DNA from: Iphione sp. A-MEVVRFRX5
Lineage: Eukaryota
DNA length: 64,000 bases
Assembly: GCA_976226885.1 (NCBI GenBank)
Contig: OZ320320.1
Location: 80,352,001 to 80,416,000, forward strand
Reading direction: 5' to 3'
Made by a program: the position numbers and the translations under genes. This document shows positions 26,783-64,000 of the stretch, one piece after another. The notes under the pieces are model-generated. The model saw only the letters and a program-made list of their open reading frames with translations, ran no database searches and was not told where the DNA came from. Within the stretch, counting starts at the first letter, position 1; each line of letters begins with the position of its first letter.

Positions 26783-28602
26783 CATGTCCCATCTAATGAG
26801 CAGCACACTACCAGTTGATCTACTGTGGTATAAGATGGTATCTACATAGACCCAGTGAAGAGTGGTCATACCATGGGCATATAGTCATCTCTCCACCAAA
26901 GAGACATAGGCCGTGTTTCCATGAATGTGGTGGTGCAGAGTATGTGTGGGATGCTTTTCTCAAATAAGCAATGTCCATAATTCACCGCACTCCACTGTGG
27001 AGAAATGTGTGGACATCAGTGGGGCATTAATTGGAGATGGCACTAGGAAAATGCTGGCATTAATTTTGAACATCTATTAAAATCTACGGAAGTTGCATAT
27101 CATTAGCATAAACCCACAAAACATTGGCGAGCACACACTTTAATTGAGACAGTCATCATGGTAAGATGTGGAGAGGATACATTAACATTGATTTCTGTGT
27201 GTGACTTGACTCAGTCCTTTCACTCTAATTGGAACACAGGGCCCACAGCGCAGTTTTCTATGGTGTGGTTCTCTCTTGGGTGGTTCTCTTGGCTTACCCC
27301 AGGGATGTAGAGTTCTTCCACGGGTTATGGCTGGTCTTGTGCACATTTGTGTGCACATGCAGTAAGAGCACATTTGGAAACCCAGCCTCTAGGGCGAACC
27401 TCCTCATACTGTTTTAGGCCTGGTTTCCTTACATGGGGCAATGTCTGTATGCAATTTTGTGCATTGCTGTGTGTTATTATCAGATAAAAGGCAATAAGTG
27501 TGGGGTGTTCAATACCTGTGGGAGCTGTCTGTGTGCGATGCTGCCAGGTGCCCATTGTCAAACCGGGTCTGATAATTCACTGCACACACAGCAATGCACT
27601 GCCATTTTTCACGTTTTTTTTTTACTTTTCCTCACTTTTAATATGATTTATTGACATGTCTGCACATGTCAGACCTTTTCCACACTTTTCCCCGTCATTT
27701 TCCCCATTTTTTGCAGCCTTCATTTTTGTGTAGACTTTATCATCAAATTCGTCCTTTTCCACATTTTTTCCCGACATTTTTTGCAACCTTTAACATCAAA
27801 TTCATCATTTTCCCCATCATTTCACACACACAAACGTACAACTTACAGCTAGCACACATATGGAATACGCATGTGTGGGAGATTGCGGGAGAGTGCATGA
27901 ACACAAAAAATGCATTCCAATGCACACTGCTGCTCTCTCCCACAGGTATGGAAACTGAGCCTTATTCTGTTTCTACCATTTGCCGTCCTGTCAAAACCTA
28001 AACACTGCTACTTGGTAGACATATACCATCTGAGAGACAATGTGAAGTTATACATTGCTATATGTCTGTGATGCTTGGAGTTATCCCTATGCAGTCACTG
28101 TTAGGAATACCTGTGTATTGACCAAGGTGCCGTAAACTCAGTACAATATGGTTCAAGGAGGTAACTCGCTCTATTTGCAATCCTGGGTCTAGTCTTTTCT
28201 AGTCTGTAGTGCGGGTAGGGCGCGACTCCGCAACCCTCTCAGTGCTGCCCCCTATTGTATTAGATATGAACTAAATCCACAGGAGAGGGCGCTGCGGTCG
28301 CCACATAGCAAGTCATGACTCATCGCCTCTGACTTGTTATGCATTTCTGGGCCGGATTTTCATTCGACATTGTCTCCATAATTGGATTATGTCACCATTA
28401 AGGTGTATCGATCCTCCATTATTGGTTATTCCAGACTTGGCGACCTTACTTTATCTTTAGTTAGCTTTTTATCGACCGCGTTCGAACTACGACAGAAGTT
28501 GCGAAGACGGACTACTGCGCATGCCCATCACCAGTGGCGCCAATTTTGAACCAATCCTCTCTCTGTTAAGGTCGATTGAGTGTCGTCTGCTTTTGGAACG
28601 TC

Positions 28603-30168
28603 ATGGCGCATATGCTGGGCCTCGCTTGTTCGTCCGGAGCGACTGCTCTTTCACCATCTCCTGTGCAAGCACAACTACGTGCGGAACATGGCTACTATCG
28701 GCAGATTACCCCACCCATCCGTGAGAACGAAGAAGGTGATCTAGAAATGGATTTCCAGGTAAATCTTAAACGATCTCGGGACGAAGCATCACCCGTCACG
28801 CCCGGTCCAAATGGGGTACCCAAGAAGCGCCCTATGCCTTGTAAACCGGACAACCAAGCACCTACATGTCCGATTACTTTGCCGAAAGTTTCCGAGGCTG
28901 CAGTTCCTGTTCAAGCTCGTCCGACAGTTCCTGCTACACCCTCCACCCCTTCGTCAACGGAGGAGACTCGACCGAAAACGGTGTACTCATCGGTGGATGA
29001 CGTGAGTGTTCGTTTGGCGGAAGCCCTTTCCTTGTCTCGTCAACATGACAAAGTGATAAAAAACATTTCTGCCGCAGTCACTAAGCTCAATGCCTCTATG
29101 GGCTCAGTGGACAATTTTCTTAATGAACATGACCAGCAAATTTATAGTCTCCAAGCTGATTTAGAACAGGCTAGACGTCATGTGTCGATTCTGAAGGAGC
29201 ACACGCTCACCCATGAAAAATATTCACGACGCCTCAACTTGATTTTTGATGGTGTTGAAGTATTGCCGAATGAAAATTCTGATACACTGCGAAGGAAGTT
29301 AGAAGACCTTTTTCGAGATGCTCTTCGTATTCGGGATATCGATTTAGATGTCGCACATCGCCTTGGTCCTGATGATGCCAGAATTCGTCCTGCCATTGCT
29401 CGGTTTCGCTCCCTTCAAGACCGAAATTTGGTCTGGTTTCGTCGAGCGGAGTTACGAAAACAACGTCCGCTGCAGATCTGGATTCGTGAGGACGTTCCCG
29501 TTGAACAACGCGATAGGCTTAACCAACTGCATCGTATTATGAGGGTTGCCAGAAATTCAGGGAACTACACCAGTGTCCGTGTCAAAGACTTTACCATAAT
29601 TATTGACGGTATTACATATGAGTATAACATGCTTGATATGTTGCCACAGGAGCTTCGCCCGATTAATTTAGCTACGGTGTCAGATAATGAAATATATGTC
29701 TTTGCAGGTCCTGCCCACCCACTGTCATTAGAGTATCCTATTCCATTGTTAATGGATGATCGTACATTTGATTCTATGCTTCACTTCTTAGTGGTACGTT
29801 ATGCGCAATGTCTACGCTTCCCCTGGATTGTCCGTAAGGCCGACAGCGCAGAGGGACACCGTGCCCTCTTTCAACTGTTGTATCACTTGAGAGCACAGGA
29901 CACTGACGATCGCAACGAGAAGGATATTTTGATTCCGGCACTGCAACACAAGTACACCACTTGCTCTGACTCTAAAAGAATTCTTTTAGAGACTGGTGAT
30001 AAACGACTGGGGTGGGCCAGTACAAACCGTCATTGGGGGATAGGTCTCCCATTCAGTCATGGTACATTGTTGAACGCGAATTCTTGGACTGGTTCTAATG
30101 TATATGGTACTATTTTGATGGAGATCCGGTCACACTTGAATGCGACACCAGATCCGGCCCGGGAATGA
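28603..30168 (+). CDS. LINE A ORF1p (521 aa): disordered N-terminus, coiled coil, L1-type RRM/CTD, C-terminal NADAR-like domain (~29690-30140)
   Basis: RRLNLIFDG, LDVAHRLG..RPAIARF, IWIRED (L1 ORF1 RRM). YVFAGPAHPLS..F.S..H, LLETGDKRLGWAS.NR.WGIG, W.GSNVYGTILMEIR..L (NADAR). Confidence 0.9.
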   Translation: MAHMLGLACSSGATALSPSPVQAQLRAEHGYYRQITPPIRENEEGDLEMDFQVNLKRSRDEASPVTPGPNGVPKKRPMPCKPDNQAPTCPITLPKVSEAAVPVQARPTVPATPSTPSSTEETRPKTVYSSVDDVSVRLAEALSLSRQHDKVIKNISAAVTKLNASMGSVDNFLNEHDQQIYSLQADLEQARRHVSILKEHTLTHEKYSRRLNLIFDGVEVLPNENSDTLRRKLEDLFRDALRIRDIDLDVAHRLGPDDARIRPAIARFRSLQDRNLVWFRRAELRKQRPLQIWIREDVPVEQRDRLNQLHRIMRVARNSGNYTSVRVKDFTIIIDGITYEYNMLDMLPQELRPINLATVSDNEIYVFAGPAHPLSLEYPIPLLMDDRTFDSMLHFLVVRYAQCLRFPWIVRKADSAEGHRALFQLLYHLRAQDTDDRNEKDILIPALQHKYTTCSDSKRILLETGDKRLGWASTNRHWGIGLPFSHGTLLNANSWTGSNVYGTILMEIRSHLNATPDPARE

Positions 30169-34979: not shown

Positions 34980-37900
34980 TCACTGAAGGGACGTAGCGAT
35001 AACCTGTTCAAGAAATGTTCTTTTTTTACCTTTAGACGCGATTGCTTGTAGTCTAAGATTTTGTAAAATTTCGTTTTTCCATGCAGGAAAGCTGACGTCT
35101 CCCTCGTAGAAGGAGTTTCTTTTCATTATAAAGAATTTCGTGAGTATCAAGATTAAGTTCAGGAACCACATATTCGGGGTCTGAGTGAAGATTCCGAAAA
35201 TATATTCATATTTCTGGATCCCTCGTTGAGGAATTGTTACATAAACTTCGCACCAATGTAATACAGCTTCCCAAAGTTCTCTTACTCTCATACATTCAAC
35301 AAAATAGTGAGGTAGATCATCCACCGCTTGACAGTACTGACATTGAATAGTTGAAGTAACTCGGATATTATAGAGGTACTTATTACACGGTATGGTCCTA
35401 TGTAGGACTTTGTATTGAAAAGATTGGTGTTTAGTCGAGACTGTAGCTATAAATGGATTCTTAAATATCTTATCCCATGGGATTTCATCAGGAGGTGAAA
35501 CTCTTTCCTTTGCATACCAAGACCTTATTGCTGTTGGTTTGTTTTTCTCTTGGTTGATTAGTGCCCAGTATATAGTAGCAGCGGCAGATTGAGAGATATC
35601 CAGGTCTTTGTCACCAATTGTTATAATAAGTGCCTCCTCAGTTAGGGGAATGTCCTGCTCTTGAGTCAGGGTTCGGAGGTGATCGGGTAAACAGTTCTTG
35701 AGTAGATTTAGTTGGGGAGAACTAAGTTCAAGACCATATATCTCTCTCATCTGTTCGACTGAATAAAAAGTACCATTCACATCTAAGATGTTGTCAACCA
35801 ATACAATGTGGGAAGCAATACATTTTCTCCTTAGTCTAGAGGGCGGAGAGGGTCTGTTCATATGAGGGCTATTCCATAAAGGTAGAGCTCTGACCCCCAG
35901 GGCTGTTACCGGGGGGTGTTTTGCTTGGGTTTTCCAGATTTTAACAATTTCTAGGTAGAAGGGATGCCGGACCCGTTTCCCTTGTGCCCTTTCAAATTTA
36001 AAGAAGGTAACTGGGTCTTTTCCGCATAATGCGTAGGTTACAAAGTCTTTACCTAAATATTCAGGCTGTACGAGGTCTGCTACTGTTTTCAGACGGTTAG
36101 CTAGTGTTCGAGACCTTAGGGAAGCTAATTTCAGGCCACCCTCTGGGATAGGTTTCTGTAGGGTATTTTTAGCTATTTTAGGTGACCGTTTGTTCCAGAG
36201 GAACGATTGTGTAAATTTGTCGTATATTTTATAAACCTCTTCTGGGACATGGTGGTTGAAGACCAAAAATTGCATGACAGGAAGAACCAAAGTGTTCAGC
36301 ACTGTGATTTTTCCTTTTAGTGATAGGTTCCTATGAGCCCACGTTTGACATATGTCTCTACACACCTGTAGCTTAGGAGGAAAATTCAGATCATAGTTCA
36401 TATGGTCATCAATTGAGTTCGTATACCAGATTCCTAATATCTTAACGTGGTTTCGCCACTGTATTGGGATTGAGGATTCCCCAGTTTTAAAGTTTGTCAC
36501 CGGGAGTCCTATACTCTTCTGGGCATTGATTCTAATACCAGCTGCCTGGCCAAATAGATGTAAGGTTTCAAACAACGAGTCTATTTCCGTTGGACATTGG
36601 ACGAAACAGGTTAGGTCATCAGCGTACTGAACATTGTACAATCTCTCGTTATGGACTGTAACCCCCGGATAGTTGGGGTGATTTTTAATCATTATTGAGA
36701 GAATCTCCACTACCATGTTGAAGAGTAGGGGGGAAGCGGGACACCCCTGGTGTACCCCTTGTCCCAACGTAAAGTATTGGGTTGTGACTCCGTTGTTTAT
36801 GATACAAGCTTCCGAGGTTGAGTAGAGAAGTCTAATTAGGTTGGTAATGTAGGGGCCCATACCAAATGCGTGTAGGGTAAAGAGGAGAAAGTCCCATGAG
36901 ACCCTGTCAAACGCTTGGGCAAAATCAAGGGCGAGGATAGCCCCTTTTATCTTCTCTTGCTGCCAATACCATATTACATCTCGCAGTATTCTATGAATAG
37001 TGGCTATATTTCTCTTTGGCATGAAACCTATTTGTGTGTTGGCTATATAATTAGGTAAGTACCTCCTCAGTTTTTGAGCAATCACAGTAGAAAGGATTTT
37101 ATAATCTACGTTTAACAGGGCTATTGGGCGCCAACTACCAGCTAGTAACGGGTCTTTTCCTGATTTTGGTAGGAGAGTAATTACCGTTTGTCGTTGGGAT
37201 GGGGTAAGAGTGCCTTCCATTATAGCTTGTTGCATCGTTTGGAAGAGTAGTGGGAGGAGTTCTTTCCAGAAGCATGAGTAAAATTCTACTGGCAGCCCGT
37301 CATTCCCCGGGGTTTTTCTCTGATGGAGGTTCTTAAGTGCTTTAGTAAGGTCGAGTTTTGTGAGCGGTGCTTCAAGTGAGTCATAGTCATCTTGAGTGAT
37401 ACGGGGGAGAAGTTGTTCCCAATTTGTGGGACCAAGAAAGGAGAAATCTGGGGGCAGCGGGGAAAAACCCTGACCCTGATATCTTTGCGAAAAGTGGTTA
37501 TATAACTGATCAGTAATCTCTCTTTGAGTCGTAAGAAGAACATTATTGTCAGAATATAATTGAGTAATAGCCCTTTTTTGCACCTTGAGTCTTTCTAGTC
37601 TGAGGAAGTATCTGGAAGGTCTCTCTCCTTCCACGTACCACCTCTCCTTAGAGCCAGCAAGGGAGACACTAGCTTTTTGGAGTTCTATATCCCTAATGAT
37701 ATTTTGAATGTTTTCAAGTCGATGTACTATCGGATCCGAGTCTGGATCTTCAATATTTACTAAGTGTAGTTTCTCATCAAATTCCTTATGAAGGGCCACA
37801 AGAAATTTTCGAGTTTCTTTAGATTTTGACTTTTGGTATTTCCTGGTAAATAGACCAACCGAAAATTTTAGAAAGTCCCAGGCTTTAGTGGGAGTAAGTT

Positions 37901-38324
37901 TTTGATCTAGTGCCTCCTGGTACCATTGTGAGAGAAGTGGCTTTAAGGTTTCACAGTATTCTTGGTTTTCTAACAGAGCTGTGTTGAGCTTCCATAGCCC
38001 TTTACCACGAGGGGGTATGGCAAGATCAAATCTGACCACAATACCGTCGTGGTCCGAGTGGTGACACCTACGGATATAAGTTTTAACAACATGACTAAGA
38101 AGATCAGAAGATACGAATACATAGTCAATTCTGGATGCTCTGGAAAATGAAGAGTTATACCATGTGTACCCTGGAATGCTTGGGTTACTATGCCTCCATG
38201 CATCTTGCAGGTCAAGACATTTAACAAAGTTCAAAAGTCTTTTATCATTGTTGATTCTTGGAGCGGTAGGCATAGACGGCCGTGGTGGGGCTTGTAGCCT
38301 ATCATCAGAATTATTAATTGTCAT
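34980..38324 (-). CDS. LINE B ORF2, 3' part (rest of APE, RT, CCHC)
   Basis: SRIDY, HSDH, KTPGNDG, LDFAQAFD, QGCPASP, YADD, CQYC....HYFVEC. It begins exactly where the 43950 segment stops. Confidence 0.95.
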   Translation of the reverse strand: MTINNSDDRLQAPPRPSMPTAPRINNDKRLLNFVKCLDLQDAWRHSNPSIPGYTWYNSSFSRASRIDYVFVSSDLLSHVVKTYIRRCHHSDHDGIVVRFDLAIPPRGKGLWKLNTALLENQEYCETLKPLLSQWYQEALDQKLTPTKAWDFLKFSVGLFTRKYQKSKSKETRKFLVALHKEFDEKLHLVNIEDPDSDPIVHRLENIQNIIRDIELQKASVSLAGSKERWYVEGERPSRYFLRLERLKVQKRAITQLYSDNNVLLTTQREITDQLYNHFSQRYQGQGFSPLPPDFSFLGPTNWEQLLPRITQDDYDSLEAPLTKLDLTKALKNLHQRKTPGNDGLPVEFYSCFWKELLPLLFQTMQQAIMEGTLTPSQRQTVITLLPKSGKDPLLAGSWRPIALLNVDYKILSTVIAQKLRRYLPNYIANTQIGFMPKRNIATIHRILRDVIWYWQQEKIKGAILALDFAQAFDRVSWDFLLFTLHAFGMGPYITNLIRLLYSTSEACIINNGVTTQYFTLGQGVHQGCPASPLLFNMVVEILSIMIKNHPNYPGVTVHNERLYNVQYADDLTCFVQCPTEIDSLFETLHLFGQAAGIRINAQKSIGLPVTNFKTGESSIPIQWRNHVKILGIWYTNSIDDHMNYDLNFPPKLQVCRDICQTWAHRNLSLKGKITVLNTLVLPVMQFLVFNHHVPEEVYKIYDKFTQSFLWNKRSPKIAKNTLQKPIPEGGLKLASLRSRTLANRLKTVADLVQPEYLGKDFVTYALCGKDPVTFFKFERAQGKRVRHPFYLEIVKIWKTQAKHPPVTALGVRALPLWNSPHMNRPSPPSRLRRKCIASHIVLVDNILDVNGTFYSVEQMREIYGLELSSPQLNLLKNCLPDHLRTLTQEQDIPLTEEALIITIGDKDLDISQSAAATIYWALINQEKNKPTAIRSWYAKERVSPPDEIPWDKIFKNPFIATVSTKHQSFQYKVLHRTIPCNKYLYNIRVTSTIQCQYCQAVDDLPHYFVECMRVRELWEAVLHWCEVYVTIPQRGIQKYEYIFGIFTQTPNMWFLNLILILTKFFIMKRNSFYEGDVSFPAWKNEILQNLRLQAIASKGKKRTFLEQVIATSLQ

Positions 38325-38327
38325 AAC

Positions 38328-38759
38328 CCGTTTCTCTCACCCACAGTCTTCTCACCGATTGCATTTGAAAACATTGTTTTTGAAAATGTGGTTAGTGCGT
38401 TCTACTTTGCTAAGTCGCGCATCTGCGATGATGGGCATGCGCAGAGAAAAATCATTGATAGCCGCTCTGGATTCGAAGCTGCACGAGTTGCTAGTAAAGT
38501 AAAGACTTGTGAAGAATGGGAAAAGGTTTCCGAGGTAATGTTATTTGATATTATCACTGACAAGATGCGCTTGAATCCAAAAGGTGTGCAGAATCTATTA
38601 GAAACTGGCGCATCAAACTTAGTATATGCCGATTATGACTCGCTGTTGGGAAGTGGTTGTAGGTACGATGGCAGTTGTGAAGAGAAAATTGAGTTCAATG
38701 GGCGTAACCTACTGGGCAAATGTTTGATGAAGCTGCGTGAAGAGTTTCTACCGCAATAG
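38328..38759 (+). CDS. LINE D upstream ORF remnant: NADAR/YbiA-like domain, open back to the truncation point
   Basis: PFLSPTVFSPIAFENIVFENVVSAFYFAK..KIIDSRSGFEAARVA..WEKVSEVML..K..NP....LLETG...LVYADYDSLLGSG..F.GRNLLGKCLMKLREEF. This is co-linear with recalled E. coli YbiA motifs. Confidence 0.85.
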   Translation, partial: PFLSPTVFSPIAFENIVFENVVSAFYFAKSRICDDGHAQRKIIDSRSGFEAARVASKVKTCEEWEKVSEVMLFDIITDKMRLNPKGVQNLLETGASNLVYADYDSLLGSGCRYDGSCEEKIEFNGRNLLGKCLMKLREEFLPQ

Positions 38760-38946
38760 GTATGAAGTCAGGTTGTGCGATCAATTGCTACACACTGTAG
38801 GCCAACTTTGTCCGACTCATTTCTTGTTGTACTGATCGCGCTCCACAACCAGATACGGCTCGTATATGTATACTGTGCTCACTACCAGTTTGATGTATTA
38901 CCATAACTGTTTGTTGGGTGATTAAGTGCGCTTAAATAATTTTCAG

Positions 38947-39674
38947 AGTACCGGATCGTCAACCGACGTGGTGTAAACAATGCGCCGAGAACACGTATTT
39001 TGATGATCATGGACTACCGCACTGCGGACGCGGTCCGTTTGATACCAGTCGATGGTCTTCCGCCGATTACTATTCACATTGTGAGAGTGAAGCGCCTGAG
39101 TTATCGTATGATAAAGGCGCATCACCTGTTCTTCGACACTTCCACCTACGACTTGGTTATGATGTCTGTAGGGATGCGCGAAGTGATCAGGAGAGAGGAT
39201 GGCCAGTGGACTGTCTTCCGCCGCTCTGCGCAGGACTACCGGTGGTGCTTGCTACGATACATCGAGCGGTTTACTAGGATGGTTTGTGGACCGCAACGCC
39301 TGGGTGGAAAACTGGTTGTGTGCCCACTGGCCAGTGCTGATCTGTCTCGATTGGAGCCTGACATAATCGACACGACAGAACAACTACTACTGAATACCGT
39401 AGTCAAATTGCACAACGTGATAGTGAGGATGACCTCAGACAGGCTGGGTTTGGCGCAGCCACGACTCGACCTGCCTGTCAACCTTTATAACAATCAGGGC
39501 ATGTCTGTGATGTCGGACCATCTGAAACAAAATGGTGCGAGTGTGACGTGGAGTGTAACGGTAGAGTGGTCATATACTCTGTATGACTTCCTTCGTAACT
39601 ACTTGCAACGCTATGGGAAGCACCTGCCTGACCCATATGTTTTTCCTTCCACTAGTGACTCGGAGGAGGACTGA
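38947..39674 (+). CDS. LINE D second upstream ORF: degenerate SGNH/GDSL esterase-like fold
   Basis: RILMIMDYR (block I-like, Ser replaced by Tyr), YDLVMMSVGMREV (block III G-x-N-D-like), VVCPL, KLHNVI, SDHLKQNG (D-x-x-H-like). Open from 38940, first ATG at 39003. Confidence 0.5.
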
Positions 39675-40578
39675 CGTGTGGGTACGCGCTGTGAGTAACT
39701 CAACCCTATATTATGTGTCCTCTTATTCTTATCTACACACTCCAATTGCGGGACAGATATGGACATTTAGCCAATGGCCCCACAGAGTACGCTTCGAACC
39801 GCATCTTGTTTTTCTCTTCATACCCCTGTGATGCTTTGTAAACAAGGCATCTGAGATTTACTTACCACCCTGTATATATCTCAGCCCGGTAAAAGTATGT
39901 CATGTGTTCTGGATATCATTCCTGGCGTTACCTGTTGCTCTGCTGTGATAATTCTCATATTCTATTCCAGTGATCCGATAAGACAAATATATTTCTCTAA
40001 ATTGAATCGTACAAGAACCTCCACTTATTTGTATTCATTACCGTATTTACATTAACTCTACTGTCTGTACTCCACGACATAATCCTGTGATGTTGTGTAA
40101 GAAGAGAATTGCATGAATCGCACCATGCCTCATTCATTACTGACTAAGACTACATTTTTATGTCCTCGTATTCATTCATGAAACTGGTGCATAGTTTGCA
40201 CATTAGAGTATTCATTAACATCCAGCTAATCCAGAACTTTAAGACATAACCTGGACTATTGATCTACATCCAGATTGTTGTACTGTATTGTATCGTTTGT
40301 TGCACTGTATTATATCGTTTGTGTACTGTATTTGCCGTCCGACTAGCGGAACTGTGTTGTACTTTATGATGTCTGACTTATCGTTATCAAATGACCTGTG
40401 ATTTTCTTATGTATAACCAAACATTTCCAGTACACTCTTCAGGGTTCATTTCCTGCCCATGCTATAAGTGTTTATGACAGTGCCTTGACTTACTGACGAT
40501 AGCCTGACTGCCTCGGGGGGGGTGGTCGCATATAGTCCGTGTGTAGAAGCTTGCTCCCGGTGCAAACTGAATACTACA

Positions 40579-43329
40579 ATGGGGCTAACTGTGGTCTCAT
40601 ACAATATCCGCAGTTTGGGAAAGAAGGTCAGTGAACTGGGACATTTGTTGGCTTGCCACAGCGTGGATGTATGTTGCATCACTGAATCTTGGCTAAACAG
40701 CACTTACCAAGATTCCAGCGTGGCCATTCCTGGGTACGATTTAGTGCGCCAGGATAGAAACACGATCCAGGCCCAAAGAGGAGGGGGTATAGTCATTTAC
40801 TTTAAAAGTCACTTTCAGGTGACAAGGAAATATGACGTGGGGCCGTCGGAATCCGCCTGCGAAATGCTGGGGATTAGACTTAAGGCTGGCAAGAGAAGGC
40901 CAATAGATGTGCTGGCAGTCTATAGACCTCCGGGTGACCCGATAGCTAAGTCAACGCATGCGATTGACCAAGCAGTGAGGGCACTACCCAGACGTGGCCG
41001 AAGTGACAGGATCATCACCGGTGATTTTAATTATCACTTTGGCTGTCCAGGCAGAGTTGGTAATGCTATAGCCGATATATTAGCAGGCCGAGGTTTCAGC
41101 CAGCTGGTAACACAAGCAACAATGATCTCCTCTGACTCTGTCCTAGATCACCTATGGGTTGACTTCACTGGTCACCTTGGTGGCAAGATTATTGAGTGGT
41201 TCTTAAGCGACCACCTGGCGGTATCTGTTACCATCAAAAAAGGAGTACGGTCTAAACAGAAGGAGACCGTAGTAACACGCAAATGGAACCAAGTTGACGT
41301 GATGGCCCTACATGACAAGCTGAGGAGTGAAGCTATAGTAATGGAGGGCTGCCACGAGTCAGCATGGGATAGCTTTGTGGACAAATTACGTGGTGAGTTA
41401 GAGGTTGTTGCCCCTCCAATCACCACGACCCGCAAAGTTGATAGAGACGGATTCACAATGAGCAACGGATTAGCCGAGTTGGCTCGAGATCGCCTATACT
41501 ACTTCCGCAAGTGGAAGAGGTACAGACAGGAGGATGATCATAGGATTTTTAAGCACCTAGACAAGGTGCTAAAATCTGAACTAAGGAAAGAACGGAAATT
41601 CTACTGGACAAGTAGAGCAAACTCAGCTATGGGTGACCCCCGTAAGCTATGGCAGGTGTTAAACCTGGCCTTAGGAAGGGGAGAGACTAAGGTGACTCTA
41701 CCTAGTCTGTCCAAAGAAAATGGTGAAACGGGGGAAAACCTAGCAAATCGCTTTAACACCTACTTCGTTGATGAAGTCCAAAAGCTAGTAAGGGAACCGA
41801 AGAAAACCGTAACTCTTGGCAGGATAAAATCTGAAAGGAGATTTGAGTTGTCTGAGCCGACACCCTGTACCGTGAGACCTCTATTGACCAGCCTGAAACT
41901 ACACAAGTCATCGGGCATAGAGGGAGTACCTATTAAGATCCTGAAACCTCTCTTGGTCCTTTGCATCGACTTCGTTGCCTGGGTGTTCAACTGTATCTAT
42001 CTGTCGGGCCACTACCCAACCTCCTGGAAGGTAGCCCGCGTGACCCCCGTCTTCAAGAAGGGGGACGCTCAGCTAACTTCCAATTACCGCCCAGTTTCAA
42101 TACTACCCGTGCAGGGTAAAGTATTTGAAAGATGGCTAGTACAGGGGGTTACAAAAGAGCTGGAGAGACAATGCTTCCTGAGCCCAAACCAGCACGGTTT
42201 CCGCCGTAATCGTGGAACCGACACCGCGATTGCTAAACTGCTATACGAGACGCATGAAGCCTTGAACAGGGGTTACTACTGCAGCCTGACGCTCTTTGAT
42301 TTCAAAAAGGCGTTCGATTTAGTGTCTCACAGCAGTGTTGTCAGCAGACTCCGGATAGCTGGTGCAGGGCCAAAACTCTGTAGGGTGATGGAGAGCTATC
42401 TCACTGGCAGAAGACAGTATGTCCGCTGCAGTGGCTTTGACTCTGCTGAGCTTCCTGTGATGACTGGAGTGCCGCAGGGGTCAGTGGTTGGCCCCATAGC
42501 TTTCTGTCTGGTGGTAGACACTGTGGTGGACATACTACCTAAAGGGACCTGTGCCGTACTGTACGCGGACGATCTGTCAGTGCTGTGTGTAGCCAGAGAC
42601 CTGATGAGGCTACGCGAGATCACTCTGCGTACAGTCCAGGAAGTAATCAAATGGAGTGGGGACCAGGGATTGGTATTGAGCCTGGCCAAGTGCAACTATA
42701 TGCCATTGGGTAAGGCATCAGGTATTCCCATGGACATTGTAGTCGATGGGACAATCCTTGAGATGGCAGAGGAAGTGAAGCTCTTAGGGTATCACCTAGA
42801 CTCTAAGCTCAAATGTGGGAAAGCAGTGAGGAAAATTAAATCCACCATGTGGGTAGCTGCGTTAAGAATCAGCAGAGCAAAGCGGAACTTACCGCTGGCT
42901 GTGAGAGTCCTATTATTCAAGTCACTAGTGGTCTCCATTTTGCATTACCATGCAGTGTCACTCTATGGCATGTCCCGGGGAGACATGGTAAGACTACAGG
43001 TGCATCTGAATAGGTGTGCCCGTCTATCCATACAGGACGGTGCCCATCTGTCATCAAGGGTGCTCCAGACTAGGTTCGGAATTGAAAGACTTGAATCAAT
43101 GGTAAGCTCGAAAGGGGTGCATGCAATCCACAAGCTAAGCAAGTTGGGGCTGGTTGATAAAGCTGCAGTAACCAACACCAGGATGGGAACAACTCAAAGA
43201 GTAAGGGTTTCCAAACCAAAGAGTAAGTTGTTCTCAGGGTCACTTGCCTACGCGGCAGTGAAGACCTGGAACAGCCTTGACCCTAGTGTCAAGGCTATGG
43301 AGAGGCTGCCAAGGGAGATTGGCGGCTAA
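40579..43329 (+). CDS. LINE D ORF2p (916 aa): APE plus RT, intact
   Basis: SYNIRS, ITESWL, YRPP, GDFN, LDH, SDH; NYRPVSIL, QHGFR, DFKKAFD, GVPQGSVVGP, YADD, C-terminal YAAVKTWNSL. Confidence 0.96.
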   Translation: MGLTVVSYNIRSLGKKVSELGHLLACHSVDVCCITESWLNSTYQDSSVAIPGYDLVRQDRNTIQAQRGGGIVIYFKSHFQVTRKYDVGPSESACEMLGIRLKAGKRRPIDVLAVYRPPGDPIAKSTHAIDQAVRALPRRGRSDRIITGDFNYHFGCPGRVGNAIADILAGRGFSQLVTQATMISSDSVLDHLWVDFTGHLGGKIIEWFLSDHLAVSVTIKKGVRSKQKETVVTRKWNQVDVMALHDKLRSEAIVMEGCHESAWDSFVDKLRGELEVVAPPITTTRKVDRDGFTMSNGLAELARDRLYYFRKWKRYRQEDDHRIFKHLDKVLKSELRKERKFYWTSRANSAMGDPRKLWQVLNLALGRGETKVTLPSLSKENGETGENLANRFNTYFVDEVQKLVREPKKTVTLGRIKSERRFELSEPTPCTVRPLLTSLKLHKSSGIEGVPIKILKPLLVLCIDFVAWVFNCIYLSGHYPTSWKVARVTPVFKKGDAQLTSNYRPVSILPVQGKVFERWLVQGVTKELERQCFLSPNQHGFRRNRGTDTAIAKLLYETHEALNRGYYCSLTLFDFKKAFDLVSHSSVVSRLRIAGAGPKLCRVMESYLTGRRQYVRCSGFDSAELPVMTGVPQGSVVGPIAFCLVVDTVVDILPKGTCAVLYADDLSVLCVARDLMRLREITLRTVQEVIKWSGDQGLVLSLAKCNYMPLGKASGIPMDIVVDGTILEMAEEVKLLGYHLDSKLKCGKAVRKIKSTMWVAALRISRAKRNLPLAVRVLLFKSLVVSILHYHAVSLYGMSRGDMVRLQVHLNRCARLSIQDGAHLSSRVLQTRFGIERLESMVSSKGVHAIHKLSKLGLVDKAAVTNTRMGTTQRVRVSKPKSKLFSGSLAYAAVKTWNSLDPSVKAMERLPREIGG

Positions 43330-43949
43330 TGTGTCTGTAGAAAGGCTAAGTGTGGTTCCCCGGTTGTGACACGGGCACACTACAGGGCTGAGACAGTAGG
43401 GAGCTTAATTAGAAAGGGAGTAACAGTTGTAAGCAGTTGTACTGCTATCTCGGTCTGGTATGGCACTTAGAGTGTGGTAAGGAAATAGCATGTCGATGTG
43501 AGGCACTATGGAGAGAGCATGTATCTGTCAGTCCATAACGAAACTATCGTGTCTGTTGACTACCTCTCCAGTGCACTGTATGGGCAAGTGAACAGTATTA
43601 CAATATGGATTCCTTTGAGTAAATGATACCTATGTCTCATCCTATAACCCAATTTTTCGGATGGGGCTTTGTCAGCCATATATGCGTAAACAGGGTAATG
43701 ATCGGATGACACTGGTTTAGTCCGGGTCAGATGCAGATCTCCACAGCAAGTTATCATAGTTGATGTATTGTGGCAAAAGCTAGCCGTCTCACTGTATCCT
43801 ATATGTGTGCTGTATCCTATATGTGTCCTGTATTCTGTATATGTGTGTTCGTCCACGTTTGAGTCATGTTATGTTATCACACCTATCTCTTGGAAACCTC
43901 TGTACTCATATGGAGATATTGAATAAAATTGAATTGAATTGAATTGAAT

Positions 43950-44393
43950 ATTAAAATCACCTAGAATAATCCAGGGGGCCGGAGTTTGTTGTACGATATA
44001 ACCCTGTATAGACCTTAAAACGTTCGATTGATTAACTGTCGATGACGCCGGAGGGATATATGTCGCCAGTACGTTGTACGTTGCTGCGTTGATAAGTAGT
44101 TCTGCGTGAAGGTAAAGTCCTTCTGGGTCAGGATAGTATGATGTGACAGTAATATTCTCATTGTTGTTAAATAGGATAGAAGTCCCTGCATGATGGGAAG
44201 AGCCATGTGAGAAAAGCCACTGACCCTTCCACTGGGTGGACCAAATGTTTACGTCATCAGGTGTACTATGAGTTTCTTGTAAACAGATCACATCGTATTC
44301 AGTAATGAAACTGAGGATTGCTTTACGCTTATTAACATTGCGTAAGCCCCTAACATTTAAGGTAATGAACGAAACACTTGGTGAACGAGACAT
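43950..44393 (-). CDS. LINE B ORF2, 5' part (148 aa of APE, ending GDFN)
   Basis: TLNVRG, LQETH, YIP, ILGDFN, followed by the D tail. Confidence 0.93.
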
Positions 44394-44489: not shown

Positions 44490-46154
44490 TCACTGGGAAG
44501 GGGCAGCAGATCCTTTCGGTGTTCCCGGCTGAGGTGGCTGTGCCGCCTGAGCAGGAGGTTGAGGATTAGGTTGAGGCCCCCGGTTGGCCTCCTCTTCGGC
44601 AGGGTCGTTGTACGGTAGGTTGTCACGAATTTCCATCAGTATACGTCCGTACCAATTGTCTCCCTTCCAGCTGGGGGGTGTGGCAATCTCTGGGTGAGAA
44701 AATGGGAGTCCGATGCCCCATTTTCTATTGATGGTCGCCCAACCGATCGTCTTCTTCCCAGTGAGTCGTAGTTGTTTATGTACCCTCACATCCGATCTGA
44801 ACCGATGTTCTAGGGCCGGGAGGAGAATGTCCTTTTCAAGTGTATCGTCGGGGACAGCTGCTCGTAGGATATACAATTGCTGGAACAACTGCCTGTGGCT
44901 TTCGGGACGAACCGCCTTATTGACGACGGCGCTCTGCTTCTTTTCGAGGGCGTAGGTGATCACAAGATACTGCAAAATAGACTGGAAATTGCCATGTGTC
45001 ATCATTAGATTATATGAGTGTTCGAGTGAGAAAGGGTGCTCAGGGCCCGCAAAGATATACATCTGTCTCGTCTCCACGGTTGCGAGAGTGGCTGGTCTTA
45101 AGAATCTTGGGAGATCGTTCCAATTGTGGTGGTCATATTGAGTATTGCCTAGAAAGAGTGTGAAGTTCTTGATTCTTACACTGGGGAACTGGTTGGAGTT
45201 CTTAGCAGTGCGAGCTATACGCTTGAGGATCTCCAATCTATCACGATGTTCAGTCGCTAGGTCCTCTCTTATCCAGATTGTTTCATGCCTATAATCCTTG
45301 AGCATGGAACGGCGAAACCATACTTCATTTCTTTCTCGGAGAGTACGGAAGCGGGCAATGACTGCTCTATTTCTGCCTCTCTCAATCCCCAGTCTGTGTG
45401 CTACATCTAAGCGAACGTGCGACAAGTTGAGCGCTTCCCCGAAAAGCCTCTCTAGTCGCTTTCTCAGAGAGTCAGCAGTTTCTTCTGGATTTTCTTCAAA
45501 GCCATCAAATATTAAATTGAGACGTCTATCAAACTTCTCTTGAACCAAGGCTAGCTCTCTATGGGTTTCAACCTTCCTGTTAAGAGTTTGAATTTCACAG
45601 TTTGAGCTAAAAATCTGCCTATCGTGTTCTTCTAAGAACTCTTCATACTCTTCTAGCTTTGATTCAAATTTAGTAACAGATGAAGAAATTTTTTCGATAC
45701 TTGCAGACTGGTCATTTGTTTTTTTCCAGAGCGCCGAGATTTTTGTAGTAATGGCGGCCATGTCCGTGTGCGGAGACTTTGGTACTGCGGCTTGTTCGTC
45801 GTCAGGGATATTCGCTGGCTGAGGTTGTTCCCTTGTGAGCTGGCCATCATCTCGTCCTTGATGGTCCTTGTCGTGTTTAACCGGAGTTTTGTTGTTATCG
45901 TTGAAGGTGAGCGCCTTCTTCGCCTGCTGTGTGGATACCGGCGAGTTCGTCAACGTGGTCTGGTCCCTAGTTCTCTTCAAAGATTGCGACTGGTGGTCCA
46001 TTGTTTGGTCCTCCTCGTCCTCTTCGATATCTGAGAAGTCCGTGTCCTTTAGGAGAGAGTATGCATGATCGGAGACGGTGTGACGTTTATATGCTGTGAG
46101 TCGGGAGATATTTTCCCCCCTCGCTTGGTGTGGAGAGCGTAAATTGCCTAGCAT
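44490..46154 (-). CDS. LINE B ORF1p (554 aa): coiled coil, L1-type RRM/CTD, C-terminal NADAR-like domain (~45066-44616)
   Basis: Co-linear with LINE A ORF1: RRLNLIFDG, LDVAHRLG, IWIRED, YIFAGPEHPFS, GWATINRKWGIGLPFSH, W.GDNWYGRILMEIR. Confidence 0.9.
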   Translation of the reverse strand: MLGNLRSPHQARGENISRLTAYKRHTVSDHAYSLLKDTDFSDIEEDEEDQTMDHQSQSLKRTRDQTTLTNSPVSTQQAKKALTFNDNNKTPVKHDKDHQGRDDGQLTREQPQPANIPDDEQAAVPKSPHTDMAAITTKISALWKKTNDQSASIEKISSSVTKFESKLEEYEEFLEEHDRQIFSSNCEIQTLNRKVETHRELALVQEKFDRRLNLIFDGFEENPEETADSLRKRLERLFGEALNLSHVRLDVAHRLGIERGRNRAVIARFRTLRERNEVWFRRSMLKDYRHETIWIREDLATEHRDRLEILKRIARTAKNSNQFPSVRIKNFTLFLGNTQYDHHNWNDLPRFLRPATLATVETRQMYIFAGPEHPFSLEHSYNLMMTHGNFQSILQYLVITYALEKKQSAVVNKAVRPESHRQLFQQLYILRAAVPDDTLEKDILLPALEHRFRSDVRVHKQLRLTGKKTIGWATINRKWGIGLPFSHPEIATPPSWKGDNWYGRILMEIRDNLPYNDPAEEEANRGPQPNPQPPAQAAQPPQPGTPKGSAAPSQ

Positions 46155-46166
46155 CTTCACTTCTGC

Positions 46167-62915: not shown

Positions 62916-64000
62916 GGTGGAAATGCGGTAAGTTTCTGGAAGTGGAAAAAGGAAACAATAATTAAGACATGACATGTATGATAGGCCAACTGCTGCGGTG
63001 TTCATGAAAGAAATAACACAATTTTGATATTTACCGTTCACTAGATTAACCTACTATTAATAAACCCATCCGATATCATTGGTTTTGATATATTTCTGCT
63101 GAGAATGCAAAAACTATGACGTATCTTCCTCATTCTTTAAACAGAATATCCAAAGCTCTGTGATGATTCAGCTGTGCTCTTTTGATCATGAAAAGCAGAA
63201 AAGAGACTATCTAAATAGTCTAATATCTTAATTTTAGATTTGTCATTAGTATGATGCCGTAGCTTTAGTAATTGAATTAAAAAAACAATAGGTCAACTTA
63301 ATGGTTAGAGACCGCCGCCTGTTGAAAGGTTCCATTTAATTATGGATGCTGCCGTTTTGTGAGCAACACCCCCTCCATCGACACAGGTCATGGTCATTCC
63401 TATGATTTTAATATATGAAGACCTTTACAGATCGGACATTTCAAAGCTTTTAGGAAAGAGAATGATCTGATGGATGAAAGTTAGAATTCGACTTTCGCAC
63501 AATCCTTTTCGGAGAATACTCCAGATCCTAATGCTTTTCATTGCAATCAAACACATATCTGTACAAACATACCCATACATGTATATCTTAATCATTTAAT
63601 TCCTGAATATTAACGGTTATATTTTGCTAAAGGACATACAAAACTAACTCGAAATTTTAATACTGGGGCTGGCTGCACACCCTGGAACAGAATGAATCTC
63701 TTTCACGGTATTACGTAGCACCCTCGCTATTTCATGCATAAAACAGCTGAAGCACACGTTCTCTCATCTATCAAAACCTCCCTCGGAATTCCTTAGATGT
63801 TTCTCACACCTAAAGTGTAACACATATGTGGCCTCTTTCCTCACATATATTTCTCACATAAAAGTCAGGGTAGTCTCTAAATACACGTTCACATTCTTTC
63901 AGTATTGCAACACCTTACTGCATATAAGGCATAATGATTGAGAACAAGTGAATGTTGCAATGGGTTACTGTATAGGATATTATGCCGGTCTCAGCTACCA

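What the first reader, a model, noticed from the sequence alone, without database searches (positions are those of the whole stretch)
38326..38759. An unrelated L2/CR1-group LINE also carries a NADAR domain upstream of ORF2, suggesting independent capture
Seen: the 5'-most 430 bp of element D is an ORF, open to the truncation point, that aligns closely with YbiA (recalled) from SPI.F through EAARVA, WEKV, LLETG and GRNLLG..LM.LRE. It differs from the A/B NADARs (keeps the K of Q..K and the D before the WG position; loses both E and the W). D's ORF2 is a 916-aa APE-RT with a (TTGAA)n tail, a different clade from A and B. Inference: NADAR was recruited at least twice by non-LTR elements in this genome, or was swapped between clades as an ORF1 module.
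Basis: partly seen in the sequence, partly recalled or inferred. Interest (0 to 1): 0.88.

Follow-up and report, generated by a model that had tools for sequence, protein, structure and literature searches.

The report
NADAR-tailed ORF1 of a three-gene LINE
The 434-bp stretch is the end of the first gene of a 5'-truncated jumping gene (LINE) from a large three-gene family, and its NADAR domain most likely arrived with a whole L1-type ORF1 protein that is also found in the neighbouring, unrelated LINEs, not as a separate capture.

Summary
Observation confirmed. Window 38325-38759 (+) is an open frame matching Pfam NADAR (E 2e-17). It is followed by a conserved 223-aa ORF, a 916-aa endonuclease-reverse transcriptase and a (TTGAA)n tail.

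Full-length copies elsewhere in the genome (about 6.7 kb) show the stretch is the C-terminus of a roughly 485-520-aa ORF1. That ORF1 has a coiled coil, RRM, CTD (human L1 ORF1p fold) and then NADAR. The layout ORF1-NADAR / ORFx / ORF2 holds in 29 of 30 sampled loci, and by coordinates in at least 17 more distant ones. It is therefore not a chimera or a transduced exon.

D's ORF2 lies outside L1/Tx1: 45 bits to human L1 ORF2p against 341 bits for element A. Membership of CR1/L2 could not be tested.

"Independent capture" is not supported. D's ORF1 upstream of NADAR is homologous to that of A and B right up to the domain junction (hhalign 95.8%, E 8e-9). One fusion that then moved, or was inherited, as a whole ORF1 module is more likely.

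D's NADAR lacks both catalytic glutamates but is under purifying selection (dN/dS about 0.18).

This scan has already reported the same three-ORF family many times on other DNA of this genome. A 2025 paper mentions NADAR in oyster Tx1 ORF1s.

The parts
38325..38759 (+). 3' end of D's ORF1: the last 144 codons plus stop, which is the NADAR domain. It is cut at about ORF1 codon 377 by 5' truncation of the element.
   Evidence: Pfam NADAR E 2e-17; 90% identical to residues 374-520 of the full-length ORF1 in L031
38760..39002 (+). 243-nt spacer between ORF1 and ORFx
   Evidence: Same spacing in full-length copies L031 and L032
39003..39674 (+). ORFx, a conserved middle ORF of 223 aa from the ATG. 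Its function is unknown, with weak hints of a PC-esterase/GDSL-like origin.
   Evidence: 2676 first-look candidates in the genome, 150 scored down to 38% identity, mostly open; dN/dS about 0.06; no Pfam or PDB sequence hit; AF2 pLDDT 44; atlas features 0.87-0.93 to PC-esterase/GDSL clusters
39675..40578 (+). About 900-nt spacer between ORFx and ORF2, poorly conserved between subfamilies
   Evidence: The DNA search matches this part only in the closest copies
40579..43329 (+). ORF2, 916 aa, APE endonuclease plus reverse transcriptase, with no zf-RVT
   Evidence: Pfam RVT_1 4e-29, Exo_endo_phos 7e-9, Exo_endo_phos_2 3e-6; only 45 bits to human L1 ORF2p
43330..43917 (+). 3' UTR
   Evidence: Lies between the ORF2 stop and the tail
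43918..43949 (+). (TTGAA)n 3' tail, the end of element D
   Evidence: TRF period 5, 6.4 copies; same tail in L031 and L032
43950..44393 (-). N-terminal part of element B's ORF2 (APE, up to ...ILGDFN), interrupted by D
   Evidence: tblastn with A's ORF2 residues 2-148; translation
34980..38324 (-). Remainder of element B's ORF2 (1114 aa; RT, zf-RVT). It continues in frame from the piece at 43950.
   Evidence: Aligns to A's ORF2 residues 184-1246 at 39.5% identity; Pfam; translation
44490..46160 (-). Element B ORF1, 556 aa, L1-type with a C-terminal degenerate NADAR
   Evidence: Pfam NADAR 1.5e-9; 41.7% identical to A's ORF1
28576..30168 (+). Element A ORF1, 530 aa, L1-type with a C-terminal degenerate NADAR; the comparison partner for D
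   Evidence: Pfam NADAR 1.6e-12; BLASTP to D's full ORF1 7e-15 over 365 aa
30217..34005 (+). Element A ORF2, 1262 aa, L1/Tx1-type APE-RT with zf-RVT
   Evidence: Pfam; 341 bits to human L1 ORF2p over 880 residues

Best explanation
Anatomy (shown). Window 38325-43949 is a 5'-truncated, otherwise open copy of a non-LTR retrotransposon family with three ORFs. ORF1 is an L1-type RNA-binding protein (coiled coil, RRM, CTD) with a NADAR domain fused to its C-terminus. ORFx is a strongly conserved protein of about 225-250 aa of unknown function. ORF2 is an APE-RT, and the element ends in a (TTGAA)n tail. The flagged 434 bp are what is left of ORF1 in this copy, which is essentially the NADAR domain. 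The copy is inserted blunt into the endonuclease-coding part of the L1/Tx1-type element B.

Origin (inferred). NADAR was not picked up separately by this lineage. The ORF1 as a whole, including RRM-CTD and the junction to NADAR, is homologous to the ORF1 of the L1/Tx1-type elements A and B, while the ORF2s belong to different LINE groups. The simplest history is one fusion of NADAR to an L1-type ORF1. That ORF1 cassette was then either transferred between LINE lineages, by recombination or by insertion of one element into another, or was retained for a very long time. The split is old: 24% identity, with different decay of the active site.

Function (inferred, weakest step). In D's family the two catalytic glutamates and the Trp of the NADAR pocket are replaced, but the phosphate-binding Lys and the Asp are kept, and the domain evolves under purifying selection. 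It most likely serves within the LINE ribonucleoprotein as a non-hydrolytic binder of ADP-ribose, NAD-like ligands or modified nucleic acid. The alternative is an enzyme with altered chemistry. It is unlikely to be a canonical guanine-ADP-ribose hydrolase.
For: Linkage. Full-length copies L031 and L032 carry ORF1 (520/486 aa, NADAR at the C-terminus), ORFx (224 aa) and ORF2 (935/916 aa) in this order. They span about 6.7 kb up to a (TGAAT)n tail. In 29 of 30 loci found through ORFx, the ORF1 3' end lies directly upstream and the APE downstream. ORF1 identity goes down to 45% and APE identity down to 37%. By coordinates, at least 17 further ORFx copies of 40-59% identity have a D-type NADAR 215-470 bp upstream on the same strand.

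Fold. The AF2 model of ORF1 residues 140-520 has pLDDT 86. Its best PDB matches are NADAR 8bau (E 1e-7) and YbiA 2b3w, followed by the human L1 ORF1p trimer 2yko/2ykp (E 2e-5, TM about 0.59).

Whole-ORF1 homology with A and B:
- BLASTP, D against A: 7e-15 over 365 aa.
- D-family profile of the pre-NADAR part against A's pre-NADAR part: 35.9 bits. Against B's: 18.1 bits. 2000 shuffled sequences reach at most 5.5 bits.
- hhalign, pre-NADAR part only: 95.8% probability, E 7.8e-9, 135 columns, running to the LP..L motif next to NADAR.
- The alignment is gap-free across the junction.

Different ORF2 groups. A's ORF2 scores 341 bits to human L1 ORF2p, D's only 45 bits, the same as to R2. The APE shows no pairwise similarity between D and A (z = 0), while RRM-CTD gives z = 15. 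Neither ORF1 finds human L1 ORF1p by sequence. The ORF1 and ORF2 similarity rankings therefore disagree.

Active site. Mapping to 8bau and 2b3w is; the roles of the residues are from PMC11543638.

Selection. dN/dS is 0.18 for NADAR, 0.16 for RRM-CTD and 0.06 for ORFx.
Against: The NADAR domain by itself does not show a shared origin. The D-family NADAR profile scores 24 and 13 bits on A and B, about the same as on an oomycete NADAR and E. coli YbiA (18.5 and 16.8 bits). The active-site substitutions also differ between D and A/B. The 150 genomic NADARs nearest to D and the 150 nearest to A share no locus.

No NADAR tree with host, bacterial and canonical LINE NADARs could be built. The excess similarity of RRM-CTD relative to RT is modest: the D-A/A-B z ratio is 0.25 against 0.17. 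The synonymous sites used for dN/dS are close to saturation, and only 13 of 36 pairs were usable. No RNA or protein evidence exists; no sequencing run was listed. The functional reading rests only on residue mapping.
Confidence: 0.68

Rival explanations
1. Independent capture. The D lineage and the A/B lineage each had an L1-type ORF1, and each fused a NADAR gene to its C-terminus separately.
For: D's NADAR is no closer to A/B's NADAR than to an oomycete or E. coli NADAR. The active-site decay patterns differ. The nearest-neighbour lists do not overlap. ESM-atlas clusters show NADAR combined with other LINE-like ORF1 parts (GDSL lipase, zf-CCHC) in annelids, so NADAR has probably been shuffled more than once. 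A Gypsy lineage in Ectocarpus acquired NADAR separately (PMC12477816).
Against: It requires the same domain to be added at the same position, with a linker of the same length, to ORF1s that are themselves homologous. The alignment is gap-free through the junction and the hhalign match runs up to it. A and B are the degenerate outliers (48 and 39 bits to Pfam, against 64 for D and over 93 for the 150 best-scoring NADAR matches of about 4,400 first-look candidates), so their low similarity to D is expected in any case.
Confidence: 0.22
2. No exchange at all. An ORF1 with coiled coil, RRM, CTD and NADAR is ancestral to both LINE groups and was inherited vertically together with ORF2. ORFx was added later in the D lineage.
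For: Type II (L1-like) ORF1s occur in L1 and also in several CR1 and L2 subgroups (PMC4120745). D-A ORF1 identity is low (24%), compatible with great age. RT similarity between D and A is also detectable (z = 32).
Against: Similarity rankings disagree between the genes. A's ORF2 is far closer to human L1 (341 bits) than to D (82 bits), yet A's ORF1 finds D's (63 bits) and not human L1 ORF1p. The APE shows no D-A similarity while RRM-CTD does. NADAR-bearing ORF1s have so far been reported only for oyster Tx1 elements, not across L1 or CR1/L2 in general.
Confidence: 0.3
3. Chimera or transduced host exon: the NADAR piece is host sequence, or part of another element, that merely happens to lie next to this copy of D.
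For: In the window the piece abuts another element, and only 144 codons are present.
Against: The same ORF1-NADAR lies upstream of the same ORFx and ORF2 in dozens of loci on many chromosomes, at 45-100% protein identity.
Confidence: 0.01
4. D's NADAR is still an enzyme. Other acidic residues (the invariant D114/D116 of the DFDS motif, and E61/E62 or E76/E77 in the numbering of alignment A4) take over catalysis, acting on ADP-ribosylated nucleic acid or another N-glycoside.
For: The phosphate-binding Lys and D130 are kept and several acidic residues are invariant. Selection is strong. In the BC4488 NADAR subfamily an Asp, not the Glu, is catalytic (PMC11543638).
Against: E43Q-type and E125-equivalent substitutions abolish activity in tested NADARs. 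The W133 equivalent is also lost.
Confidence: 0.3

Closest known systems
NADAR domains in ORF1 of Tx1 LINEs of the Pacific oyster (Repbase), mentioned in passing in PMC12477816 (2025)
   Same: A YbiA-family NADAR domain sits inside a LINE ORF1 protein. Elements A and B of this window are of that kind: L1/Tx1-type ORF2 with an ORF1 ending in NADAR.
   Different: D's ORF2 is not L1/Tx1-type (45 against 341 bits to human L1 ORF2p). The element has a third conserved ORF and a (TTGAA)n tail. Its NADAR has lost both catalytic Glu residues. No paper in the searched library describes this.
Human LINE-1 ORF1p (type II ORF1: coiled coil, RRM, CTD; PDB 2yko/2ykp)
   Same: The predicted fold of D's ORF1 residues 140-365 matches the L1 ORF1p trimer subunit (Foldseek E 2e-5, TM about 0.59), with two long helices ahead of RRM and CTD.
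   Different: There is no sequence-level match (Pfam Transposase_22 is not hit). A 150-aa NADAR domain is appended, and the ORF1 is carried by a LINE that is not of the L1 type.
NADAR / YbiA hydrolases (DarT1-NADAR antitoxins, P. nicotianae NADAR 8bau, E. coli YbiA 2b3w)
   Same: Pfam match above the cut-off. The fold matches at TM 0.67-0.69 normalised to the target. K50 and D130 equivalents are kept.
   Different: The E43 and E125 equivalents are replaced (hydrophobic residue, Tyr) and W133 is Leu. The domain is fused to an RNA-binding protein of a retrotransposon and is not free-standing.
ORF1 shuffling in CR1/L2 lineages (Metcalfe and Casane 2014, PMC4120745)
   Same: It gives a precedent and a mechanism. 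Whole ORF1s of one type are found with unrelated ORF2s. The proposed route is insertion of a 5'-truncated element into another element between its ORF1 and ORF2. The present window shows such nesting of D inside B, although here in the opposite orientation.
   Different: That study lists CCHC, RRM, PHD, esterase and Transposase_22 modules. It reports no NADAR and no three-ORF layout.
Esterase-type (type IV) LINE ORF1 of CR1/L2 elements
   Same: ORFx lies where such an ORF1 would lie, directly ahead of ORF2. Its language-model features lean towards PC-esterase/GDSL clusters. An annelid atlas cluster combines NADAR with Lipase_GDSL_2.
   Different: There is no Pfam or PDB sequence match and no usable fold model. 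The positions that would hold the SGNH residues are not conserved as Ser/Gly/Asn/His. This identity is not established.

Membership tests
NADAR (Pfam PF08719, YbiA-like) | Sequence match above the curated cut-off | tested here: met
   64.4 bits against a cut-off of 35.1 for the window copy; 58-59 bits for the full-length copies
NADAR (Pfam PF08719, YbiA-like) | YbiA-like fold | tested here: met
   AF2 model with pLDDT 86; Foldseek 8bau E 1.3e-7 (TMt 0.67) and 2b3w E 6e-6 (TMt 0.69)
NADAR (Pfam PF08719, YbiA-like) | Catalytic residues of active NADARs: the Glu and Lys of the E..K motif (E43, K50) and the second acidic residue (E125, or Asp in BC4488-type) | tested here: not met
   The Lys is kept. 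The E43 position is V/A/L/I and the E125 position is Tyr throughout the family. W133 is Leu and D130 is kept. Residue roles are from PMC11543638.
NADAR (Pfam PF08719, YbiA-like) | Hydrolase activity on ADP-ribosylated bases or N-glycosides | not testable with these tools
   Needs a biochemical assay
Type II (L1-like) LINE ORF1p | Coiled coil followed by RRM and CTD | tested here: met
   Helices at model residues 2-38 and 42-80, then beta-alpha-beta domains; human L1 ORF1p trimer chains rank 3-11; atlas cluster with the same layout, TM 0.57 over 307 aa
Type II (L1-like) LINE ORF1p | Sequence match to Pfam Transposase_22 or to PDB L1 ORF1p | tested here: not met
   No hit at E up to 1 in Pfam or up to 10 in PDB
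L1/Tx1 group of LINEs (for D's ORF2) | Strong similarity over the whole of ORF2 to L1 ORF2p, and a C-terminal zf-RVT | tested here: not met
   45 bits to human L1 ORF2p, the same as to R2 (46 bits), and no zf-RVT. Element A gives 341 bits and has zf-RVT.
CR1/L2 group ('Jockey superfamily') of LINEs | Placement of the RT domain among named CR1/L2 references in a phylogeny | not testable with these tools
   No named reference RTs could be obtained. The nearest public proteins are 27-35% identical and unnamed.
CR1/L2 group ('Jockey superfamily') of LINEs | APE plus RT in ORF2 and a short tandem-repeat 3' tail in place of poly(A) | tested here: met
   Pfam domains; (TTGAA)n tails in three copies. 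These features are compatible with the group but not exclusive to it.
SGNH/GDSL or PC-esterase (for ORFx) | Sequence or fold match and the Ser-Gly-Asn-His blocks | tested here: inconclusive
   No Pfam hit in 20 members and no PDB hit. The AF2 model is unusable at pLDDT 44. Only language-model neighbours at 0.87-0.93 point to this family. There is one real hit in 1.84 billion representatives.

The most novel reading that the evidence does not exclude
An ORF1 cassette (L1-type RNA-binding protein plus NADAR) has moved between unrelated LINE lineages in a lophotrochozoan-type genome. It is kept because LINE ribonucleoproteins must deal with ADP-ribosylation of their RNA or cDNA by the host. Canonical copies would erase the mark. 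Copies like D's, which have lost the catalytic glutamates but are still under selection, would bind or shield it. That would make nucleic-acid ADP-ribosylation a host defence against retrotransposons, with NADAR as the element's counter-measure.
Probability: 0.2. Interest if true: 0.8.

Novelty: new variant of a known kind. Interest (0 to 1): 0.5.

Why it matters
NADAR enzymes remove ADP-ribose from DNA and RNA bases, and their role in animals is unknown. This genome holds thousands of LINE ORF1 genes that end in a NADAR domain, in at least two unrelated LINE backbones. One of those backbones has an extra conserved gene.

If the ORF1-NADAR unit is one cassette shared across backbones, that is a clear case of modular exchange of LINE ORF1s. 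It would also suggest that the NADAR part is useful to retrotransposition as such.

It also gives biochemists a natural series to compare: canonical NADAR copies, and two differently degenerated but still conserved versions. For this finding in particular, the result corrects the claim of repeated capture.

Tried and rejected
This ruled out a NADAR tree with the canonical genomic NADAR-ORF1s and the putative host NADAR gene (C22:27636416), and an RT tree of distant subfamilies.
- The search for homologous proteins with ORFx and with D's ORF1 found nothing. With the RT region it gave only unnamed proteins of 27-35% identity. Cluster look-up gave no clade names.
- A profile search of 1.84 billion representatives with ORFx gave one true fragment, P0001, on a 1.6-kb contig.
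- AF2 on ORFx failed at pLDDT 44, so no fold search was made with it.
- A Pfam scan of D's ORF2 C-terminus for CR1-associated families found nothing.
- Neighbourhoods of the two nearest long-contig RT relatives show no NADAR or ORFx. A 237-aa upstream ORF in L067 is unrelated to ORFx.
- No public sequencing run was listed for a full-length copy, so expression was not examined and read laying was not used.
- I first took the 1114-aa minus-strand ORF at 34980-38324 for a separate element cutting D. That reading is rejected: it is the continuation of B's ORF2.
- A 2-bp target-site duplication is rejected, because removing it would put a stop codon in B's frame (reading).

Full report
**What is at the coordinates**

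The frame 38325-38756 is open and ends at a TAG at 38757-38759. Its 144 residues match Pfam NADAR (PF08719) at E 2e-17, 64.4 bits against a cut-off of 35.1, covering profile positions 26-162 of 163.

Downstream on the same strand lie:
- a 223/224-aa ORF at 39003-39674, called ORFx here, with no Pfam match;
- a 916-aa ORF2 from the ATG at 40579 with APE and RT domains;
- a 590-nt 3' UTR;
- an (ATTGA)6.4 array at 43918-43949.

**Where the element ends**

The 1114-aa minus-strand ORF that abuts the NADAR frame (34980-38324) is not a separate insertion. With A's ORF2 as the query, residues 2-148 align to 44384-43950 and residues 184-1246 align to 38204-35019. The minus strand reads ...ILGDFN, with the last codon at 43950-43952, and then MTINNSDDRL from 38324 downwards.

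So element B's ORF2 is split cleanly and in frame by D. D occupies 38325-43949 (5625 bp). It was 5'-truncated within ORF1 when it inserted, lies in the opposite orientation to B, and has no target-site duplication.

**Is NADAR really part of this element family?**

A DNA search of the window's own genome with 38326-40600 found copies that keep the NADAR part, ORFx and the start of ORF2 together, at 65-82% identity.

Two full-length copies were read (L031, L032). Each has an ORF1 of 520/486 aa whose C-terminus is the NADAR domain, a 224-aa ORFx and a 935/916-aa ORF2. Their similarity spans about 6.7 kb and ends in (TGAAT)n.

ORFx as a protein query gave 2676 first-look candidates, of which 150 were scored, down to 38% identity and mostly with open frames. 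In the 30 loci delivered, tblastn finds the ORF1 3' end directly upstream in 29 and the APE downstream. ORF1 identity goes down to 45% and APE identity down to 37%. Partial ORF1s are what 5' truncation would produce.

A coordinates-only cross-match of the ORFx list with a list of D-type NADAR places adds at least 17 pairs among the more distant copies. In these, ORFx is 40-59% identical, NADAR is 35-47% identical, and the two lie on the same strand 215-470 bp apart.

This is an old, large family with a fixed three-ORF layout.

**What ORF1 is**

An AF2 model of ORF1 residues 140-520, built on an alignment of 11 family members plus A and B, reached pLDDT 86.4. It has two long helices, an RRM-like domain, a second small alpha/beta domain, and then the NADAR domain.

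Foldseek against the PDB ranks P. nicotianae NADAR (8bau, E 1.3e-7) and E. coli YbiA (2b3w) first. Nine chains of the human LINE-1 ORF1p trimer follow (2yko/2ykp/2ykq, E 2e-5 to 1e-3, TM about 0.5-0.6 by target). The ESM atlas holds a 419-aa NADAR cluster with the same layout, at TM 0.57 over 307 residues.

ORF1 is therefore a type II (L1-like) ORF1p with a C-terminal NADAR. This is the same architecture as the ORF1s of A and B in this window.

**Independent capture or a shared ORF1?**

D's full ORF1 aligns with A's over 365 residues (BLASTP 7e-15, 24% identity). The alignment starts in the coiled coil and runs through RRM, CTD and NADAR. With B, the detectable part is upstream of NADAR (6e-5).

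With the NADAR part cut away, the results are:
- A profile of D-family pre-NADAR sequences scores 35.9 bits on A's pre-NADAR part and 18.1 bits on B's. 2000 shuffled controls reach at most 5.5 bits.
- A profile-profile comparison of the pre-NADAR parts alone gives 95.8% probability, E 7.8e-9, 135 columns and 29% identity. It ends at the LP..L motif that immediately precedes NADAR.
- The multiple alignment has no gap between CTD and NADAR in D against A and B.

The carrier protein and the position of the fusion are thus shared, which is hard to reconcile with two separate captures.

The NADAR domain alone is uninformative. The D profile scores 24 and 13 bits on A and B, against 18.5 and 16.8 bits on the oomycete and E. 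coli enzymes. The active-site changes differ between the groups. The 150 nearest genomic neighbours of D's NADAR and of A's NADAR share no locus. A and B are the degenerate outliers: 48 and 39 bits to Pfam, where the 150 best-scoring NADAR matches in the genome all exceed 93 bits (out of about 4,400 first-look candidates). I put a single fusion at about 0.7.

**Are the ORF2s really unrelated?**

A's ORF2 matches human L1 ORF2p at 341 bits over 880 residues and carries zf-RVT. D's matches it at 45 bits, no better than R2 (46 bits), and has no zf-RVT.

Smith-Waterman z-scores by module, D against A compared with A against B:

| Module | D-A | A-B |
|---|---|---|
| APE | 0 | 59 |
| RT | 32 | 184 |
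| post-RT | 3.6 | 121 |
| RRM-CTD | 15 | 61 |
| NADAR | 6.5 | 76 |

Relative to the A-B calibration, RRM-CTD is the best-kept module between D and A, while the APE is not recognisably similar. Neither ORF1 finds human L1 ORF1p by sequence.

The similarity rankings of ORF1 and ORF2 thus disagree. That favours transfer of a whole ORF1 between LINE lineages over strict co-inheritance. The margin is modest, however, and the event is old.

Whole-ORF1 exchange, by insertion of a truncated element into another, has been proposed for CR1/L2 lineages, where type II ORF1s also occur (PMC4120745). The D-in-B nesting seen here is that kind of event, but in the wrong orientation to make a hybrid.

The label CR1/L2 itself could not be tested. 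The nearest public RTs are unnamed and 27-35% identical. The tandem-repeat tail and the APE-RT layout are compatible with the group but not diagnostic.

**State of the NADAR domain**

In the profile alignment to 8bau and 2b3w and in the family alignment, the positions compare as follows:
- the Lys equivalent to K50 is invariant;
- the Asp equivalent to D130 is nearly invariant (the DFDS motif);
- the E43 position is V/A/L/I;
- the E125 position is Tyr;
- W133 is Leu.

In tested NADARs the equivalents of E43, K50 and E125 (or the Asp of the BC4488 type) are needed for guanine de-ADP-ribosylation (PMC11543638).

Between family members, dN/dS is about 0.18 for NADAR, 0.16 for RRM-CTD and 0.06 for ORFx. 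Synonymous sites are near saturation. The domain is therefore maintained but probably does not work as a canonical hydrolase. Retained ligand or nucleic-acid binding is the most economical reading, and altered chemistry is the alternative.

**ORFx**

ORFx is the most conserved part of the family, but it has:
- no Pfam hit in 20 members;
- no PDB sequence hit;
- one true hit among 1.84 billion representatives;
- an unusable AF2 model.

Only language-model neighbours (PC-esterase/GDSL clusters at 0.87-0.93) and an annelid atlas cluster combining NADAR with Lipase_GDSL_2 and zf-CCHC hint at an esterase origin. I leave its function open.

**What was known**

The searched literature holds one passing remark that ORF1 proteins of several oyster Tx1 LINEs contain YbiA-family NADAR domains (PMC12477816). 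No paper in the searched library (PMC open-access papers and bioRxiv) describes NADAR in another LINE group or a three-ORF layout.

Within this scan, many earlier notes on other DNA of the same genome describe the same three-ORF family. I treated them as leads and re-derived the anatomy here.

The ORF1 as a whole is shared between the two LINE backbones, so the claim of repeated capture is not supported.

**Verdict**

This is a real feature, correctly observed. It is partly wrong: NADAR came with a shared ORF1 cassette and was most likely not recruited twice. It is a new variant of a known kind, of moderate interest.

Noticed in passing
window 34980-38324 (-) and 43950-44393 (-): These two pieces are one ORF2, that of element B, split in frame by D between ...ILGDFN and MTINNSDDRL. 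D inserted blunt, with no target-site duplication and no loss of B codons.
   Followed up: yes
window 39003-39674; genome-wide: ORFx is the most constrained gene of the family (dN/dS about 0.06) and has at least 2676 first-look candidates in the genome. Public protein collections hold almost nothing like it: one 111-aa fragment, P0001, 35% identical, on the 1.6-kb ENA contig L065.
   Followed up: partly
G000:C22:27636416-27636865 (-): This is the best NADAR match in the genome (176 bits, full profile, 329-aa open frame), far above all LINE copies. It may be the host's own NADAR gene and would be the natural outgroup or donor candidate. It could not be fetched.
   Followed up: no
genome-wide: There are at least 4416 first-look NADAR candidates. 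The 150 scored all exceed 93 bits, and most lie in open frames of 450-700 aa. The NADARs nearest to D and those nearest to A form separate sets with no shared locus among the top 150 of each.
   Followed up: partly
ESM atlas neighbours of L031 ORF1: An annelid-dominated cluster of proteins of about 480 aa combines NADAR with Lipase_GDSL_2 and zf-CCHC. Viral clusters combine NADAR with capping enzymes or an RdRP. NADAR seems to ride with several kinds of retroelement and viral RNA-handling proteins.
   Followed up: no
P0065, P0105: Some of the nearest public relatives of D's RT carry a PHD finger ahead of the APE in ORF2. This arrangement is described for an L2 subgroup with a type II ORF1 in PMC4120745. 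It is a weak pointer to the L2/CR1 side.
   Followed up: partly
window 39675-40578: A spacer of about 900 nt separates ORFx from ORF2 and is poorly conserved between subfamilies. How ORF2 gets translated from such a transcript is unexplained.
   Followed up: no
window 60594-63041 (-): An 815-aa open frame with a secretin-family 7TM receptor domain (Pfam 7tm_2, 6e-24), apparently a host gene or exon block next to the LINE nest.
   Followed up: no
window 13-1029 (+): A further RT fragment, 24% identical to the C-terminal third of D's ORF2 (tblastn 4e-24). It is another LINE remnant of a different family.
   Followed up: no
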